Positions 50,567 through 58,875 of a DNA stretch of 64,000 nt are shown here, piece after piece (position 1 is the first letter of the stretch; every line of letters starts with the position of its first letter). Under the pieces are notes generated by a model. That model was given only the letters and a program-made list of their open reading frames with translations. It had not been told where the DNA came from and ran no database searches. The DNA is from Macrostomum lignano (lineage: Eukaryota), in contig NIVC01000012.1 of the NCBI GenBank assembly GCA_002269645.1, positions 558,001 to 622,000 on the forward strand, given 5' to 3'. The translations under genes and the position numbers were made by a program.

Positions 50567-53500
50567 CTACTTAGACTTCTTGGCCATGTCGGCCGCGGCG
50601 GCTGCCTGCATTAGGTGCGCCTTCAGAGCCGCCTGCCGCTTTCGCTGCTGCTCCAGCGCCCGCTCCAGTTTGATGTTCACCCGGCCGATCAGGGTCTCTT
50701 CGTAGGGCACCTTCTTCTCCATCTCTTGTACTCGGTGCATCTTGCGCTTGTAGCTGCGAATGCCGCCCATCAGCTCCGTGATGTCGATCTGACCGTCACC
50801 GTCCCTGTCCAGGATGATGAAAATCGACTGCAGGCACTGCTGAGACGCTGGGAAGCCCAGACTCTGCGGTGTTTGGGGTGGATGAGGGGGGAGCCGAGTT
50901 AGACTTTGACACTCTGGAGACTTCTATACTCTCCACCGACAATCATTAGGCTTCTATACTCTCCACCGACAATCATTGGGCTTCTATACCCTCCACTGAC
51001 AATCATTAGGCTTCTATACCCTCCACTGACAATCATTAGGCTTCTATACCCTCCACTGACAATCATTAGGCTTCTATACCCTCCACTGACAATCATTAGG
51101 CTTCTATACCCTCCACTGACTATCATTAGGCTTCTATACCCTCCACTGACAATCATTAGGCTTCTATACCCTCCACTGACAATCATTAGGCTTCTATACC
51201 CTCCACTGACTATCATTAGGCTTCTATACCCTCCACTGACAATCATTAGGCTTCTATACCCTCCACTGACAATCATTAGGCTTCTATACCCTCCACTGAC
51301 AATCATTAGGCTTCTATACCCTCCACTGACTATCATTAGGCTTCTATACCCTCCACTGACTATCATTAGGCTTCTATACCCTCCACTGACTATCATTGGG
51401 CTTCTATACCCTCCACTGACTATCGTTAGGCTTCTATACCCTCCACTGACTATCATTAGGCTTCTATACCCTCCACTGACTATCATTAGGCTTCTATACC
51501 CTCCACTGACTATCGTTAGGCTTCTATACCCTCCACTGACTATCATTAGGCTTCTATACCCTCCACTGACTATCATTAGGCTTCTATACCCTCCACTGAC
51601 AATCGTTAGGCTTCTATACCCTCCACTGACTATCATTAGGCTTCTATACCCTCCACTGACTATCATTAGGCTTCTATAGGTTTCTTTACCCTCCACTGAC
51701 TATCATTAGGCTTCTATACCCTCCACCGACAATCATTAGGCTTCTATACCCTCCACTGACAATCATTAGGCTTCTAAACCCTCCACTGACAATCATTAGG
51801 CTTCCATACCCTCCACTGACTATCATTAGGCTTCTATACCCTCCACTGACTATCATTAGGCTTCTATACCCTCCACCGACAATCATTAGGCTTCTATACC
51901 CTTCGCTGACAATCTGGAGGCTTCCACTAACCATTATTCGACTTCTATAAAGCATCCACTCAACATATTTATGTTTCATACACTCCGCTGGCTATATTTC
52001 CATTTCTTTACCGTCTACTGACTTAATCTGATGTAAGCCCTTGACAACGCATAAACGTACCTTCAGTCCTTCTTTAAACTTCTTGCCAGACACCGATTTA
52101 GTGTTGCTGCTGTCCAGATTCATGAAGAAGTCCATAAGTCGAAGATTTTTAATTCGCATAAACTCCATTAGAAGCTGTCAGAATAGAGGATTTACATCAA
52201 GTTTTATTAAACGACCATGCAGCTACGTTTATGAAGTCTTTTAATACAGAGGTATCGATTTACCAGCCACTTACTGTCATTGGATCGTCATTCAAGCCTT
52301 GCAGATCTTCTTCAGTCTTGCTCTCGCCTTCTTCTTCTTCTTCTTCTTCGGGCGTGCTCGGGCCAGGGCCCATGGCACCGGGCGTCAGATGGCGCCCGCC
52401 TTCCCGAGGAAGTTCAACACCGCGACGCAGTTCTCGAAAACTGCCGCGGGCTCCGGGCTTGGCCCCCAGAGGCGGCAGCGGTGTGATGTCAGGGCGGGGC
52501 AGGAGATCAGCAGATGGGCCGCCGTCTCCTCTCCATCGCCACAGAAGCGGCAGGTGGGGGCCACGTCAACGCCGATGGCGGCCTGGAAGCCCCGCAGGGC
52601 CGGGCAGCGGTCGGCGCGCAGCTGGCAGATCAGCCGCTCCTGCCGCCGCGTGAGGTCGCTTGTCGGCTGAGGCGGCAGGCGGCCCGCCGTGCAGGCAAGG
52701 TGCCAGGCAAGCGAGCTCGTGCTCGCCGCCTCGGTGGCCGCCGCGTTGTAGATCTGGTGCCAGCGGGCGAGGCAGTAGCGGCGGACGGCAGCCTGCGCGG
52801 CAGCTAGCGGTACGGGCGCGGTGCCTTGCGCCAGCGTGGTGCCTTGCTTGGCGATCTCGTCCACGGCCTCGTTGCCTGGGATTCCCGCGTGGCCAGGCAC
52901 CCACTGCAGGTGGACCGAGGTTCCCCGGGCCGCGAGGTCGGCGAGGCTGCCCCAGACGGCGTCGATCATGGTGGCGCCCGTCGACCCGGGGCCGGACGCG
53001 AGCGCGCTAAGCGCGCTCAGGGAGTCGGAGCAGATGCGGACCGGCGACAGCTCTGCCGGGTCCGGGGCCGCGAGCACCCACCGAAGGGCCTCAGCGATGG
53101 CCACTAACTCGGCGTGGAAGCTGGACGTCACATGGCCAGCAGCGACGCACAGCGTCGTGTTGGGCTCGACCAGGACGCCACTGCCGCCGTCCAGGATGCC
53201 GTCCTTCGCCGCTCCGTCGGTCCAGATCACGGTGCTGGCGGGCGGCAGGGCGGCAAGTGTCTGCTGCGCCGCGGCTCTCCGGGCCTCCGGCAGGTCCCCC
53301 CGCGAGGTTGGGGAGGCCAACTGCAGCCCGAGGGTGACAGAGTCCAGAACAGCCCAGGGAGGTGTCGTCGGGATAGCGTGGACGGGCTCTCGCGGGAAGC
53401 CGCTCAGGCCCGCAGCGCTGCATACACTGGCCGCCGTCTCGCGCCAGCCGCGGGCGCTTTGGAGGCGGCGGCGCGGGCCGACGCTGGCCGCGCAGGCGCG

Positions 53501-56500: not shown

Positions 56501-58875
56501 AGGTAGTCAATGAAGATGACTCCTTCACAGTCCCAGAAAACTGTTACCATCGTTTTGGTGACAGCTGGTACTGCCCTGGCCTTGGTTTCAGAGTTATAGT
56601 GCGGTAACCAGATTTTGTCATCGGTAACGATTCGACGCCAAAAGTTTTCACCCAGCTTCTCCAGCTTCTCCTGCAGAGCATGACACTGCTTCACCCGCTC
56701 ATCCTTCTGTTCCTGCGATAACAGCCGTGCATGGCACCCATCGAGCACAGACCTTGCTCATGCCCAGCTCATTCGACAGCATCTCATGAGCTGCGCCATG
56801 TGAAATGCCGAGAAGGCTGGCCACATCATCAACAGTGAGCCGCCCGTCTGCAAGCACCAGCTGGCGCGCACGGTCACATTTGCTCGAGAAGTTGATGTTG
56901 CAGGTCTACCACATCTAGGGTCGTCTTTCAAGGTGTCTGACCGCTTGCCAATCGCTCGATCCAGGAATAAACTGTGCTGCGAGAGAGAGCACGGTCACCA
57001 AAGACTGACTGTAGGTCACGAACGATTTCAGAACCTCGATGGCCTTTAGAGTGCAAAAAGAACACGATTGAGCGCTGTTTCTGTACTGCATCTTTCATTT
57101 TAGCTGAAAGGGTGGGCTTTGTTGAGAAGTACTGCGAAAAATCTAAAAGACATGATGTCGAAATATTGGTGTCAGAATATTGCTAAAATGTTTGTCTATT
57201 CGGTAGTGTCAAACAAAACATAATTTAATTAACTGTAAATGCTACAAACTCAAAAGTCCAAGAACTTTTTGACTGCCATAATTTAGCAAAATTTAGTGAG
57301 CTATTTTTAGACTCTGGGAGTGTTTCCCAAGGTCACGGCTTTGAGTTGTTTTTTTATTGGCTGAAGGCGAACCGTTGGCGCTAGTAGCTCGTACATGTAT
57401 TTTTACGCCTAAGATCTTACGGAAGTTTTTCCAGTCAGGTCTTTTTGAAGCTATTTTTAGCATCAATCTAGGTGATTCCCCAAGATCAATTGATTTCATC
57501 ACCCATTTTTAGCATCGATTCTTATTTTCCCAAGGTCACTTGACTTTTCAGATAAAGCGCGGTGCTTTTTAGTATGCATGTTCACTGGTTTGCTATTTTT
57601 GCGGCGTAAAAATCGTGATTGCGTCAAGGTTATTTGATTTCTAGAGCGACTAGAACTTTCGAGCTATTTTTAGCACCAATAGGTGTTTTCCAAGGTCAGT
57701 TGACTTCCAGTTTGAACTGTGCTTCTCCGAGGTCACGTGATTAGAATTTCCGTCGCGAAATGTACGTTTACTAGTGCGCTATTTTTAGCAGCCGTTTTTC
57801 CTGGAAACTTCGGTTCGACAACGCGACTTCACTCACCAGCTCTGCAAGGCTGACACTTTCCCGAAGAAACTGCGCCAGCTGAATGGCTCCGGAGCTGCCA
57901 AGGTCGTTGCACTCCAAGCAGAGACTGCGGATGCTGACGCTGTACTGAAATGGTAATGAAGCATCCCAAGATGAGAATGGCAGAGTAGCCCATGTGCACA
58001 TGCATGCGACTGAGTCACCTGGTTTAAACCTTGGCTACGGGGATAAATATTGGCAAATGGACTCGTTATGCGATTCATGCCACTTAAGAATGTCATCAAA
58101 TTAATGGCGCCACTAAAGAATTTCATCAAATTAATGGCGCCACTTTAGAATGTCATTAAATTAATGGCGCCACTTTAGAATGTCAATAAATAATTGGCGC
58201 CACATTAGAATGTCATCAAATTAATGGCGCCACTTTAGAATGTCATTAATGGTGCCACTTTATAATGTCATTAATGGCGCCACTTTAGATTGTCATTGAT
58301 GACGTCACTTTAGAATGTCATTAATGGTGCCACTTTATAATGTCATTAATGGCGCCATTTTAGAATGTCATTAATGGTGCCACTTTATAATGTCATTAAT
58401 GGCGCCATTTTAGAATGTCATTAATGGTGTCACTTTAGAATTTCAATAAATTAATGGCGCCACTTTAGATTGTCATTGATGACGTCACACTTTAGAATGT
58501 CATTAATGGCGTAGAATGTCATTAAGGGCGCCACTTTAGAATGTCAATAATGGCGCCACTTTAGAATGTCATTAAGGGCGCCACTTTAGAATGTCAATAA
58601 TGGCGCCACTTTAGAATGTCATTAAGGGCGCCACTTTAGAATGTCAATAATGGCGCCACTTTAGAATGTCCTTAATGACCCGACCTGAGTCTGCTCACCT
58701 GCAACGCTGTGAAGTAGGTGAAGCTTTCCAGATCGTTAATCTTCAGTCCCCTCAGCTCCAAAATGTCCTGGTCGATTGTCTGCAGAAGGCGCTGGATCGG
58801 CGCTTTTCCGGCAGCTTTGCACAGGCTCGTGTAGCGCTTCTGCAACTCGGTAAGCGACCCGGACTTTGCCGCCAT
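50567..58875 (-). CDS. LRRC74-like leucine-rich-repeat protein with C-terminal EF-hands (native form 480 aa); exon 7 interrupted by a retrotransposon
   Basis: Exons 58875-58699, 57944-57837, 55974-55881, 55794-55745, 55667-55586, 55252-54876, 54340-54241 joined to 52318-52275 (split), 52174-52061, 50863-50567. RI-type LRRs (LDLSWNQVRADGA, LLLANNGLSIQGC, LDLGNNRIDARC) and canonical EF loop DRDGDGQIDITE. Total 1443 nt in frame. Confidence 0.8.
50913..51925. repeat. 30-bp minisatellite in the last intron of the LRR gene
   Basis: Unit CTTCTATACCCTCCACTGAC(A/T)ATCATTAGG. Confidence 0.96.
52330..54240 (-). mobile_element. 5'-truncated non-LTR retrotransposon carrying RNase H (I-superfamily-like: I/Ingi/Nimb type), 1911 bp
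   Basis: Uninterrupted ORF: GLPQGSVLAPLLF, YADD, FLGVILD (distal RT only), RNase H (WTDG, AELVAI, SDS, GHAGIPGNEAVD), CCHC knuckle CRFC..ETAAHLLISC, stop at 52385-52387. (GAA)n tail at 52330-52349. Perfect 11-bp TSD TGCTCTCGCCT (+ strand) at 52319-52329 and 54241-54251. Clade is not resolved. Confidence 0.93.
55274..55518. repeat. (GTCT)n microsatellite in LRR intron 5
   Basis: Direct reading. Confidence 0.95.
56021..57277 (-). mobile_element. Decayed mariner (Tc1/mariner) DNA transposon in intron 2 of the LRR gene
   Basis: TIRs 56021-56045 and 57253-57277 (23/25 identical). Transposase from ATG 57098 (MKDAVQKQRSIVFFL..RSTVYSWIERL, frameshift, DDPRCGRP), then IVTDDKIW, LLHDNARLH, HPPYSPNLAPSDYHLF. 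About 1.26 kb; no clean TA TSD seen. Confidence 0.92.
58075..58675. repeat. 25-29-bp minisatellite in LRR intron 1
   Basis: Unit AATGGCGCCACTTTAGAATGTCATT(AAATT). Confidence 0.92.

What the first reader, a model, noticed from the sequence alone, without database searches (positions are those of the whole stretch)
52275..58875. Retrotransposon inserted in frame into a coding exon: predicted LRR + partial RT + RNase H + CCHC chimera
Seen: the 671-aa ORF at 52385-54400 is not all retroelement. Its first part (GLTVDQQTIQLANSIGAVRAFSLLHGRVLRGES, 54340-54241) is host exon 7, whose remainder (KTEEDLQGLNDDPMT, GTAAGT donor at 52274) resumes after the second copy of an 11-bp TSD. Removing the element plus one TSD restores a 144-nt exon. 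With the element in place, 988 nt of LRR exons run without a break into 1856 nt of element ORF, a 947-aa fusion that swaps the EF-hands for the distal RT half, an RNase H with its acidic residues and His present, and a zinc knuckle. Known: the proximal RT motifs with the first catalytic Asp are missing, so no RT activity is expected. Inference: this is either a nascent domain fusion (an LRR-targeted RNase H) or a knockout allele. Sense, in-frame insertion happens by chance about 1 time in 6, so frame alone does not show selection.
Basis: partly seen in the sequence, partly recalled or inferred. Interest (0 to 1): 0.85.

Follow-up and report, generated by a model that had tools for sequence, protein, structure and literature searches.

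The report
Young LINE insertion in coding exon
A very recent, 5'-truncated LINE retrotransposon sits in frame inside exon 7 of one copy of an LRR/EF-hand gene of the flatworm Macrostomum lignano; it is a real but ordinary insertional mutation in a gene that has uninterrupted sister copies, not a demonstrated new fusion gene.

Summary
These are the 671-aa ORF, the 11-bp target-site duplication (TSD), the 144-nt restored exon, the 988 + 1856 nt (947-aa) in-frame fusion, the missing RT motif A, the intact RNase H residues and the C-terminal CCHC.

The window is Macrostomum lignano assembly Mlig_3_7, contig NIVC01000012.1:558001-622000. The element is a 1.9-kb 5'-truncated copy of an APE+RT+RNase H+CCHC LINE with a (GAA)n tail. 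It shows no amino-acid difference over 563 residues from a full-length M. lignano copy, so it is very young, and its open frame is a default rather than a sign of selection.

The host gene is an LRRC74A-like LRR + EF-hand gene whose architecture is conserved in other animals. Four older M. lignano gene models carry the same exon uninterrupted. The GenBank model at this locus (PAA94293.1) skips the element as a 1922-nt "intron" with no GT-AG option and no pyrimidine tract, probably a cross-mapping artefact.

The element's stop lies 110 nt upstream of the next exon junction and the filled exon has no poly(A) signal, so nonsense-mediated decay (NMD) or exon skipping is expected.

Verdict: a tolerated knockout or hypomorphic copy, and an ordinary event. 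RNA evidence is still lacking.

The parts
54876..58875 (-). Host gene exons 1-6, encoding the LRR part (888 nt, 296 aa). Exons (high to low): 58875-58699, 57944-57837, 55974-55881, 55794-55745, 55667-55586, 55252-54876.
   Evidence: Open frame and splice sites. LRR_6/LRR_1 Pfam hits. Collinear with the chiton LRRC74A-like protein and with many 500-700-aa proteins.
54241..54340 (-). Exon 7, 5' part (host sequence), ending in TSD copy 1. An alternative in-frame acceptor would start the exon at 54382.
   Evidence: Aligns with the ortholog segment ISVDQRFLSALKDL...HGHIVSG. Adding it to the element raises the RVT_1 score by only 5 bits (66.5 against 61.6), so the Pfam extension into it is chance. 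Alternative acceptor.
54241..54251 (-). TSD copy 1, AGGCGAGAGCA
52330..54240 (-). 5'-truncated LINE copy, 1911 nt, 71.7% GC: distal RT, linker, RNase H, CCHC, stop codon, 35-nt 3' UTR and (GAA)n tail.
53879..54238 (-). Partial reverse transcriptase: motif B GLPQGSVLAPLLF (54220-54182), motif C YADD (54124-54113) and downstream. Motif A and the fingers are missing.
   Evidence: RVT_1 profile positions 116-205 of 205. Alignment A1.
52838..53236 (-). RNase H domain with all catalytic residues: D395 (53218-53216), E431 (53110-53108), D459 (53026-53024), H504 (52891-52889), D514 (52861-52859).
   Evidence: Pfam RNase_H E=1.7e-13. Alignment to HIV RNase H chains. Residues invariant in A1. Coordinates.
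52499..52552 (-). C-terminal CCHC zinc finger of ORF2, CRFCGDGEETAAHLLISC
   Evidence: Weak zf-RVT hit. C617, H629 and C634 invariant.
52385..52387 (-). Element stop codon TGA. For the host transcript it is a premature stop 110 nt upstream of the exon 7 donor.
52329..52349 (-). (GAA)7 3' tail of the element. Its last A overlaps TSD copy 2.
   Evidence: The 48%-identical relative L001 ends in the same kind of tail.
52319..52329 (-). TSD copy 2, AGGCGAGAGCA
52275..52318 (-). Exon 7, 3' part (KTEEDLQGLNDDPMT), followed by donor GTAAGT
52061..52174 (-). Host exon 8 (start of the EF-hand pair)
50567..50863 (-). Host exon 9 (EF-hand DRDGDGQIDITEL, stop TAG)

Best explanation
A currently or very recently active LINE family of Macrostomum lignano inserted a 1.9-kb 5'-truncated copy by target-primed reverse transcription. 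The family's ORF2 has an APE endonuclease, RT, RNase H and a C-terminal CCHC finger, and its copies end in a (GAA)n tail. The copy landed in exon 7 of one copy of an LRRC74A-like LRR + EF-hand gene, duplicating 11 bp of target (shown).

The insertion happens to be sense and in the ORF2 frame. A young element's ORF2 is still open, so the host frame runs on for 617 element codons to the element's own stop (shown). This is a by-product, not a selected fusion (inferred).

The interrupted copy most likely behaves as a null or hypomorphic allele (inferred). Transcripts that include the 2.07-kb exon carry a premature stop 110 nt before the next junction and have no internal poly(A) signal, so they should be NMD substrates. 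Skipping the enlarged, symmetric exon would give an in-frame 432-aa protein lacking 48 residues.

The damage is tolerated because the sequenced DV1 line carries other copies of the gene with an uninterrupted exon 7, whether paralogs, homeologs or alleles (empty copies shown; tolerance inferred).

The GenBank model that jumps the element is most likely produced by RNA from those empty copies being mapped onto this locus (inferred).
For: Insertion hallmarks:
- Unique 11-bp TSD.
- (GAA)n tail at the 3' junction, shared by a 48%-identical relative.
- 5' truncation relative to the 1222-aa full-length family member P0009, which carries Exo_endo_phos, RVT_1 and RNase_H.
- No other copy or terminal repeat in the window.

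Host identity of both exon halves:
- Collinear alignment with the chiton LRRC74A-like protein across the restored junction.
- Dozens of 500-700-aa proteins match residues ~11-455 in one stretch.

Youth: no amino-acid difference over 563 residues from P0009, which gives a 95% upper bound of about 0.24% pairwise divergence.

Empty copies in the same species: P0002, P0029, P0069 and P0173 all read ...RGESKTEEDLQGLNDDPM. They share K/D/A/L where the window has Q/S/F/M.

Redundancy of the DV1 genome: 180 Mb of non-repetitive blocks at least 95% identical, plus extra large chromosomes (PMC5730564).

Transcript prediction:
- No AATAAA or ATTAAA in the filled exon.
- The stop lies 110 nt upstream of the donor.
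- Exon 7 is symmetric, and skipping it leaves a 432-aa ORF.

The annotated "intron":
- Of 12 equivalent gap placements none is GT-AG and one is GC-AG.
- The last 30 nt are 17% pyrimidine against 47-70% for the gene's eight real introns, with 8 competing AGs.
- The annotation pipeline used BLAT at minId 0.8 and STAR with 1000 multimaps (PMC5730564).
Against: - No RNA, peptide or population data could be examined, so the fate of transcripts from this copy is predicted, not observed.
- The GenBank CDS PAA94293.1 at this very locus excludes the element. Taken at face value, that would mean the element is removed from the mRNA.
- I could not retrieve the DNA of the empty copies. Whether they are alleles, homeologs or paralogs is therefore open, as is whether they are present in Mlig_3_7.
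- The EJC-type NMD rule is assumed, not demonstrated, for this flatworm.
- The LRR exons carry no annotated CDS at this locus, so how this copy is expressed is uncertain.
Confidence: 0.8

Rival explanations
1. Nascent domain fusion: the locus makes a stable 947-aa (or 961-aa) protein in which the LRR array is joined to a partial RT, an active RNase H and a zinc finger, and this protein has, or is acquiring, a function.
For: - The frame is open through the junction.
- The RNase H catalytic residues and the CCHC are intact.
- The host promoter and six LRR exons are intact.
Against: - The openness and intact residues are what any copy this young would show: 0 differences in 563 aa from another copy.
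- Sense and in-frame placement has a 1-in-6 chance baseline.
- The RT is cut inside the palm, with motif A and the fingers missing, so the junction region is a partial domain likely to misfold.
- A premature stop precedes two introns and there is no poly(A) signal.
- The fusion is absent from all other M. lignano copies and from orthologs, which keep the EF-hands.
- No public protein model spans the junction.
Confidence: 0.04
2. Newborn intron: the LINE is removed from the pre-mRNA as a 1922-nt GC-AG intron. The donor (GAG|GCGAGA) lies in TSD copy 1 and the acceptor AG lies in TSD copy 2. This restores a wild-type mRNA, as the GenBank model implies.
For: - The GenBank CDS PAA94293.1 at this locus carries the window-specific residues and omits exactly the element plus one TSD.
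- One of the 12 equivalent gap placements is GC-AG.
- The same gene already uses two GC donors.
Against: - The protein is translated from the genome, so its copy-specific residues say nothing about which copy produced the RNA.
- The pipeline mapped de novo transcripts at 80% minimum identity and reads with up to 1000 multimaps in a genome with at least 95%-identical duplicates.
- The 3' end of the candidate intron is pure purine (17% pyrimidine in the last 30 nt) with 8 competing AGs.
- The donor GCGAGA is weaker than the gene's real GC donors, GCAAGG and GCAAGT.
Confidence: 0.07
3. Assembly artefact: a LINE-containing read was wrongly joined into the gene during assembly.
For: Mlig_3_7 is a repeat-rich, redundant PacBio-based assembly. 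The element's composition differs sharply from its flanks.
Against: A chimeric join would not produce any of the following:
- a perfect 11-bp TSD,
- a family-typical (GAA)n tail exactly at the 3' junction,
- exact restoration of a 144-nt, ortholog-collinear exon on removal.
Confidence: 0.03

Closest known systems
Disease-causing 5'-truncated LINE-1 insertions into human coding exons (for example the F8 insertions found by Kazazian and colleagues, reviewed in PMC4859970; L1-induced MET exon 14 skipping, PMC12934576)
   Same: - Target-primed reverse transcription product with a TSD, 5' truncation and a 3' tail, inside a coding exon.
- The expected outcomes are loss of function, NMD or exon skipping.
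   Different: - A different LINE clade: it carries RNase H and has a (GAA)n tail rather than poly(A).
- A flatworm host.
- Sense and in-frame, so a long chimeric ORF exists on paper.
- No phenotype is known, and redundant gene copies are present.
Drosophila I factor and other RNase H-bearing APE-type LINEs (ORF2 = APE + RT/RNase H + C-terminal Cys-His domain; 3' ends made of short repeats; PMC2881922)
   Same: - The same ORF2 domain order, seen in the full-length family member P0009.
- A simple-repeat 3' tail instead of poly(A), plus a TSD.
   Different: - Clade membership was not tested phylogenetically.
- The nearest sequences are only unnamed metagenomic or Logan ORFs at 32-48% identity.
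- ORF1 was not seen.
- Very high GC (72%, GC3 87%) in a 45% GC genome.
Host-transposon fusion genes such as SETMAR or ERCC6-PGBD3 (my own knowledge, not checked here)
   Same: A host N-terminal module reads in frame into transposon-derived catalytic domains.
   Different: - Those fusions are old and conserved, arose through splicing to a captured exon, retain whole domains and have transcript and protein evidence.
- Here the insertion is days-to-recent in evolutionary terms, absent from sister copies, cuts the RT in half, and has no expression evidence.
Transposon-generated introns that borrow the TSD for a splice site (introner elements of algae and fungi; Ds/dSpm splicing out of maize exons) (my own knowledge, not checked here)
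   Same: The only placement of the annotated gap that is splice-like uses TSD copy 1 for the donor and TSD copy 2 for the acceptor AG.
   Different: - Those elements carry or create good splice signals.
- This one ends in a purine run with many competing AGs.
- The supporting gene model is explainable by cross-mapping.

Membership tests
APE-type non-LTR retrotransposon (LINE) insertion made by target-primed reverse transcription | Non-LTR-type RT contiguous with a family ORF2 that carries an APE endonuclease | tested here: met
   RVT_1 hit. 564/566 identity to P0009, which has Exo_endo_phos, Exo_endo_phos_2, RVT_1 and RNase_H.
APE-type non-LTR retrotransposon (LINE) insertion made by target-primed reverse transcription | Target-site duplication flanking the copy | tested here: met
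   An 11-bp repeat present only at the two junctions, with 0.02 expected by chance.
APE-type non-LTR retrotransposon (LINE) insertion made by target-primed reverse transcription | 3' end is poly(A) or a simple repeat abutting the TSD | tested here: met
   (GAA)7 at 52349-52329. The relative L001 ends in the same way.
APE-type non-LTR retrotransposon (LINE) insertion made by target-primed reverse transcription | 5' truncation and no terminal repeats | tested here: met
   The copy starts inside the RT, between motifs A and B. The element matches only itself in the window.
I-like, RNase H-bearing LINE clades (I, Nimb, Ingi, Tad1, LOA, R1 group) | RNase H domain downstream of RT, and a C-terminal Cys-His motif | tested here: met
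   Pfam RNase_H and zf-RVT hits. Conserved catalytic and CCHC residues.
I-like, RNase H-bearing LINE clades (I, Nimb, Ingi, Tad1, LOA, R1 group) | RT phylogeny places the element inside a named clade | not tested
   No reference LINE library was available. The nearest hits are unnamed.
I-like, RNase H-bearing LINE clades (I, Nimb, Ingi, Tad1, LOA, R1 group) | ORF1 with gag-like zinc knuckles | not testable with these tools
   The window copy is truncated, and the DNA of a full-length copy could not be retrieved.
LRRC74A-like LRR + EF-hand proteins (host gene) | RI-type leucine-rich repeats followed by a C-terminal EF-hand pair, collinear with orthologs | tested here: met
   LRR_6 and EF-hand_7/EF-hand_6 hits. 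33% identity over 415 aa with the Liolophura LRRC74A-like protein. Many single-stretch matches over residues 11-455.
Domesticated host-transposon fusion gene | Fusion shared by paralogs or orthologs (age and conservation) | tested here: not met
   Four other M. lignano models and all orthologs examined lack the element.
Domesticated host-transposon fusion gene | Selection on the captured part beyond what its age explains | tested here: not met
   No amino-acid difference in 563 aa from another copy, so divergence is under about 0.24% and there has been no time for selection to act.
Domesticated host-transposon fusion gene | Transcript or protein evidence for the chimera | not testable with these tools
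   No junction-spanning protein in the databases. The only model at the locus omits the element. No read data were accessible.
Spliceosomal intron (the gap in GenBank model PAA94293.1) | GT-AG or GC-AG boundaries | tested here: inconclusive
   0 of 12 placements are GT-AG and 1 of 12 is GC-AG.
Spliceosomal intron (the gap in GenBank model PAA94293.1) | Pyrimidine-rich 3' end with an unambiguous AG, like the gene's other introns | tested here: not met
   17% pyrimidine against 47-70% for the real introns, and 8 competing AGs in the last 30 nt.

The most novel reading that the evidence does not exclude
The LINE copy is precisely removed from the pre-mRNA as a brand-new 1922-nt GC-AG intron. Its donor and acceptor are both supplied by the two copies of the target-site duplication, so a retrotransposon insertion into a coding exon has created an intron without harming the mRNA. 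The GenBank model at this locus is literally this structure.
Probability: 0.07. Interest if true: 0.75.

Novelty: new member of a known kind. Interest (0 to 1): 0.25.

Why it matters
If the main reading is right, three modest points follow:
- M. lignano, a transgenic regeneration model, harbours a LINE family that has been active essentially up to the present and is still hitting coding exons.
- The DV1 genome's redundancy lets such hits persist.
- Public gene models in this assembly can silently bridge transposon insertions: PAA94293.1 is annotated across a 1.9-kb LINE. That matters for anyone designing knockouts or reading paralog differences.

It would matter much more only if copy-specific RNA showed one of two things. 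One is precise splicing-out of the element, which would be intron birth from a retrotransposon. The other is a stable LRR-RNase H protein.

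Tried and rejected
- **RT match inside the "host" exon:** Pfam's RVT_1 match begins at ORF residue 29, inside the claimed host exon, which raised the possibility that the element starts further upstream. 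I rejected this. The host part adds only about 5 bits and aligns with the chiton ortholog. Relatives show that the resemblance (RARVKLGS... against HGRVLRGES) is chance.
- **Fixing the 5' junction with P0009:** this failed because P0009 is a spliced model that skips RT motifs B-C.
- **Retrieving DNA for P0009 and P0002:** not on record. The empty-site locus and a full-length element could therefore not be compared at the DNA level.
- **Junction-spanning proteins in public data:** none found. M. lignano reads appear not to be represented in the Logan part of the database, so this absence is uninformative.
- **Other element copies in the window:** none.
- **Mariner inverted repeats:** the default 9-nt seed search missed them. 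A direct alignment found them.
- **Literature search for the gene ID Mlig018354:** no papers.
- **Clade assignment:** not attempted beyond domain architecture, for lack of a reference library.
- **Horizontal transfer as the cause of the 72% GC content:** considered but not pursued. A 48%-identical relative is also GC-rich at 59%, so high GC looks like a property of the family.

Full report
**What is in the sequence**

On the minus strand the window carries a nine-exon gene. The exons are 58875-58699, 57944-57837, 55974-55881, 55794-55745, 55667-55586, 55252-54876, 54340-52275, 52174-52061 and 50863-50567.

Exon 7 is 2066 nt long because it contains a block of 1911 nt at 71.7% GC in a 44.8% GC window. 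The block is flanked by the only two copies in the window of AGGCGAGAGCA, at 54251-54241 and 52329-52319. Chance expectation is 0.02 copies.

The block ends with TGA, a 35-nt GC-rich 3' UTR and (GAA)7, directly abutting the second repeat copy. Removing the block plus one repeat gives a 144-nt exon and a 480-aa open frame through to TAG at 50567. With the block in place, 988 nt of host exons read into 1856 nt of element ORF, giving 947 aa.

**What the inserted block is**

Pfam finds the distal part of RVT_1, a complete RNase_H and a weak zf-RVT match.

The best database match is P0009, a 1222-aa Macrostomum lignano protein (UniProt A0A1I8JA46). It carries Exo_endo_phos (APE endonuclease), RVT_1, RNase_H and the same C-terminus, and is identical to the window ORF from AETKAQ to the end, 563 residues. 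The window copy is therefore a 5'-truncated member of an APE-type LINE family.

Alignment with more distant relatives at 25-48% identity shows the following:
- The copy begins between RT motifs A and B.
- Motif A (FDFRRAYD, which holds the first catalytic Asp) and everything upstream are missing.
- GLPQGSVLAPLLF and YADD are present.
- The RNase H residues D395, E431, D459, H504 and D514 are invariant, and they align with the HIV RNase H residues in solved structures.
- The C-terminal C-x2-C-x8-H-x4-C motif is conserved.

That last motif is the ORF2 Cys-His finger typical of I-factor-like LINEs (PMC2881922), not a gag knuckle.

A 48%-identical relative on an ENA contig (L001) also ends in a short GC-rich UTR followed by (GAA)n. 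The tail is therefore a family trait, and it marks the true 3' end.

TSD, simple-repeat tail, 5' truncation and absence of terminal repeats together are the signature of target-primed reverse transcription.

**Is "exon 7" really host sequence?**

Pfam's RT match starts at ORF residue 29, inside the claimed host exon, which needed resolving. With the element alone the match covers profile positions 116-205 at 61.6 bits. Adding the host part extends it to position 82 but raises the score only to 66.5 bits.

The restored host protein aligns collinearly with a chiton LRRC74A-like protein straight across the junction: HGRVLRG-ESKTEEDLQGLN-DDPMTLLMEF against HGHIVSGLDPQMSLGPEVMNTDDPLLLLFEY.

An exhaustive search found 700 proteins at E < 1e-30, among them dozens of 500-700-aa proteins that match residues ~11-455 in one stretch.

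So both halves of exon 7 are host sequence, and the LRR + EF-hand architecture is conserved (Pfam LRR_6 and EF-hand_7). The fusion discards a conserved module.

**Where the window comes from, and what the public record says**

One homolog, P0172 (GenBank PAA94293.1, BOX15_Mlig018354g1), led to a 23.8-kb locus of the M. lignano Mlig_3_7 assembly. That locus is 100.0% identical to window 64000-42000 over 22,001 bp with no gaps. The window is therefore NIVC01000012.1:558001-622000.

The GenBank gene spans window 54400-50567. Its 204-aa protein is MSLALQTSNSLWPQPMPGRQ followed by exon 7a, exon 7b, exon 8 and exon 9. In other words, the deposited model treats the LINE as a 1922-nt intron.

The signals do not support a real intron:
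- Because of the TSD there are 12 equivalent placements of that gap. None is GT-AG and one is GC-AG (GAG|GCGAGA ... GAAGAAG|GCGAGA).
- Its last 30 nt are 17% pyrimidine, against 47-70% for the gene's eight real introns.
- It holds eight competing AGs in that stretch.

The annotation was built in a way that allows cross-mapping. De novo transcripts were mapped with BLAT at 80% minimum identity, and reads were mapped with STAR allowing 1000 multimaps. The genome has 180 Mb of non-repetitive duplicates at least 95% identical (PMC5730564). I therefore read the model as RNA from an uninterrupted copy laid over this locus, but real splicing is not excluded.

**Uninterrupted copies exist**

Four gene models from the older ML2 assembly of the same line read ...RGESKTEEDLQGLNDDPM without the element: P0002, P0029, P0069 and P0173. 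They share K, D, A and L where the window has Q14, S (50863-50861), F (50821-50819) and M (50611-50609).

They therefore come from at least one other copy of the gene, and the insertion is specific to the window copy. P0173 also joins LRR exons 5-6 to exon 7, which puts the LRR exons and exon 7 in one gene. Three of these models (P0002, P0029 and P0173) point to an alternative in-frame acceptor 42 nt upstream of the one I used.

**Age and chance**

No amino-acid difference in 563 residues between the window copy and P0009 gives a 95% upper bound of about 0.24% pairwise divergence. At that age an intact ORF, intact RNase H residues and an intact zinc finger are the default and carry no information about selection.

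**Likely consequence (inferred)**

- The filled exon has no AATAAA or ATTAAA.
- The element's stop lies 110 nt upstream of the exon 7 donor, and two introns follow. Read-through transcripts would therefore carry a premature termination codon in a position that triggers NMD under the exon-junction rule.
- Exon 7 is symmetric, so skipping the enlarged exon would give an in-frame 432-aa protein. Exon skipping is a known outcome of exonic LINE insertions (PMC4859970, PMC12934576).
- A translated fusion would begin its element part in the middle of the RT palm.

None of this could be tested against reads.

**Verdict**

This is a new instance of a well-known kind of event, namely LINE insertional mutagenesis of a coding exon. 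It is made visible by its youth and tolerated by gene redundancy.

The two more exciting readings remain formally open at a few percent each: a functional LRR-RNase H protein, and a newborn intron built from the TSD. The copy-specific RNA analysis described under next steps would settle both.

Noticed in passing
window 54400-50567 (NIVC01000012.1:612400-608567): GenBank gene BOX15_Mlig018354g1 / PAA94293.1 is annotated on this filled locus. It bridges the 1.9-kb LINE as an intron and starts at an ATG inside intron 6. The six LRR exons upstream (58875-54876) carry no annotated CDS.
   Followed up: partly
window 54384-54382: A second in-frame acceptor (CTGCAG|ACT) lies 42 nt upstream of the exon 7 acceptor. 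Two ML2 models (P0002, P0029) begin exactly here with TSNSLWP, and P0173 joins its LRR exons to the same point. It could be an alternative acceptor or a trans-splice acceptor.
   Followed up: partly
window 57277-56021 (minus strand, intron 2): A decayed mariner/Tc1-like DNA transposon of about 1.26 kb. It has imperfect ~33-bp terminal inverted repeats (GGCAGTCARAAAGTTCTYGGAC...) and a broken transposase ORF with Transposase_1 and DDE_3 hits.
   Followed up: partly
window 55880-55875 and 55744-55739: Introns 3 and 4 of the host gene use GC donors (GCAAGG, GCAAGT), so two of the eight introns in one gene are GC-AG.
   Followed up: no
window 54240-52330; L001: The element is 72% GC, with GC3 87% and CpG observed/expected 1.02. 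The window is 45% GC with CpG observed/expected 0.70. A 48%-identical relative is 59% GC and shares a CATGGGCCC-type 3' UTR motif and the (GAA)n tail. No explanation was sought for the extreme composition.
   Followed up: partly
window 47514-47803, 48350-49326, 50261-50444, 50921-51914, 55281-55519, 58079-58677, 59320-59656, 60374-60778: The introns and flanks of the gene are packed with tandem arrays: (CTAT)n, a 12-bp unit x82, (TCTG)n twice, a 30-bp unit x33, a 25-bp unit x21, (TAGT)n and (AACT)n. Several translate into long spurious ORFs.
   Followed up: no
window 46296-48317 (+), 36797-37393 (+), 32159-32674 (+), 9951-10715 (-): Exons of neighbouring genes: a Metallopep (PF12044) peptidase convergent with the host gene, an eIF4E-family protein, DNA polymerase delta subunit 4, and a PI4KB-type PIK domain.
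   Followed up: no
window 14241-17237 (-): A 998-aa ORF with a structured N-terminal part followed by about 50 tandem copies of PSQPGSGYAPPP. The only Pfam hit is a weak match to the formin FH1 region.
   Followed up: no
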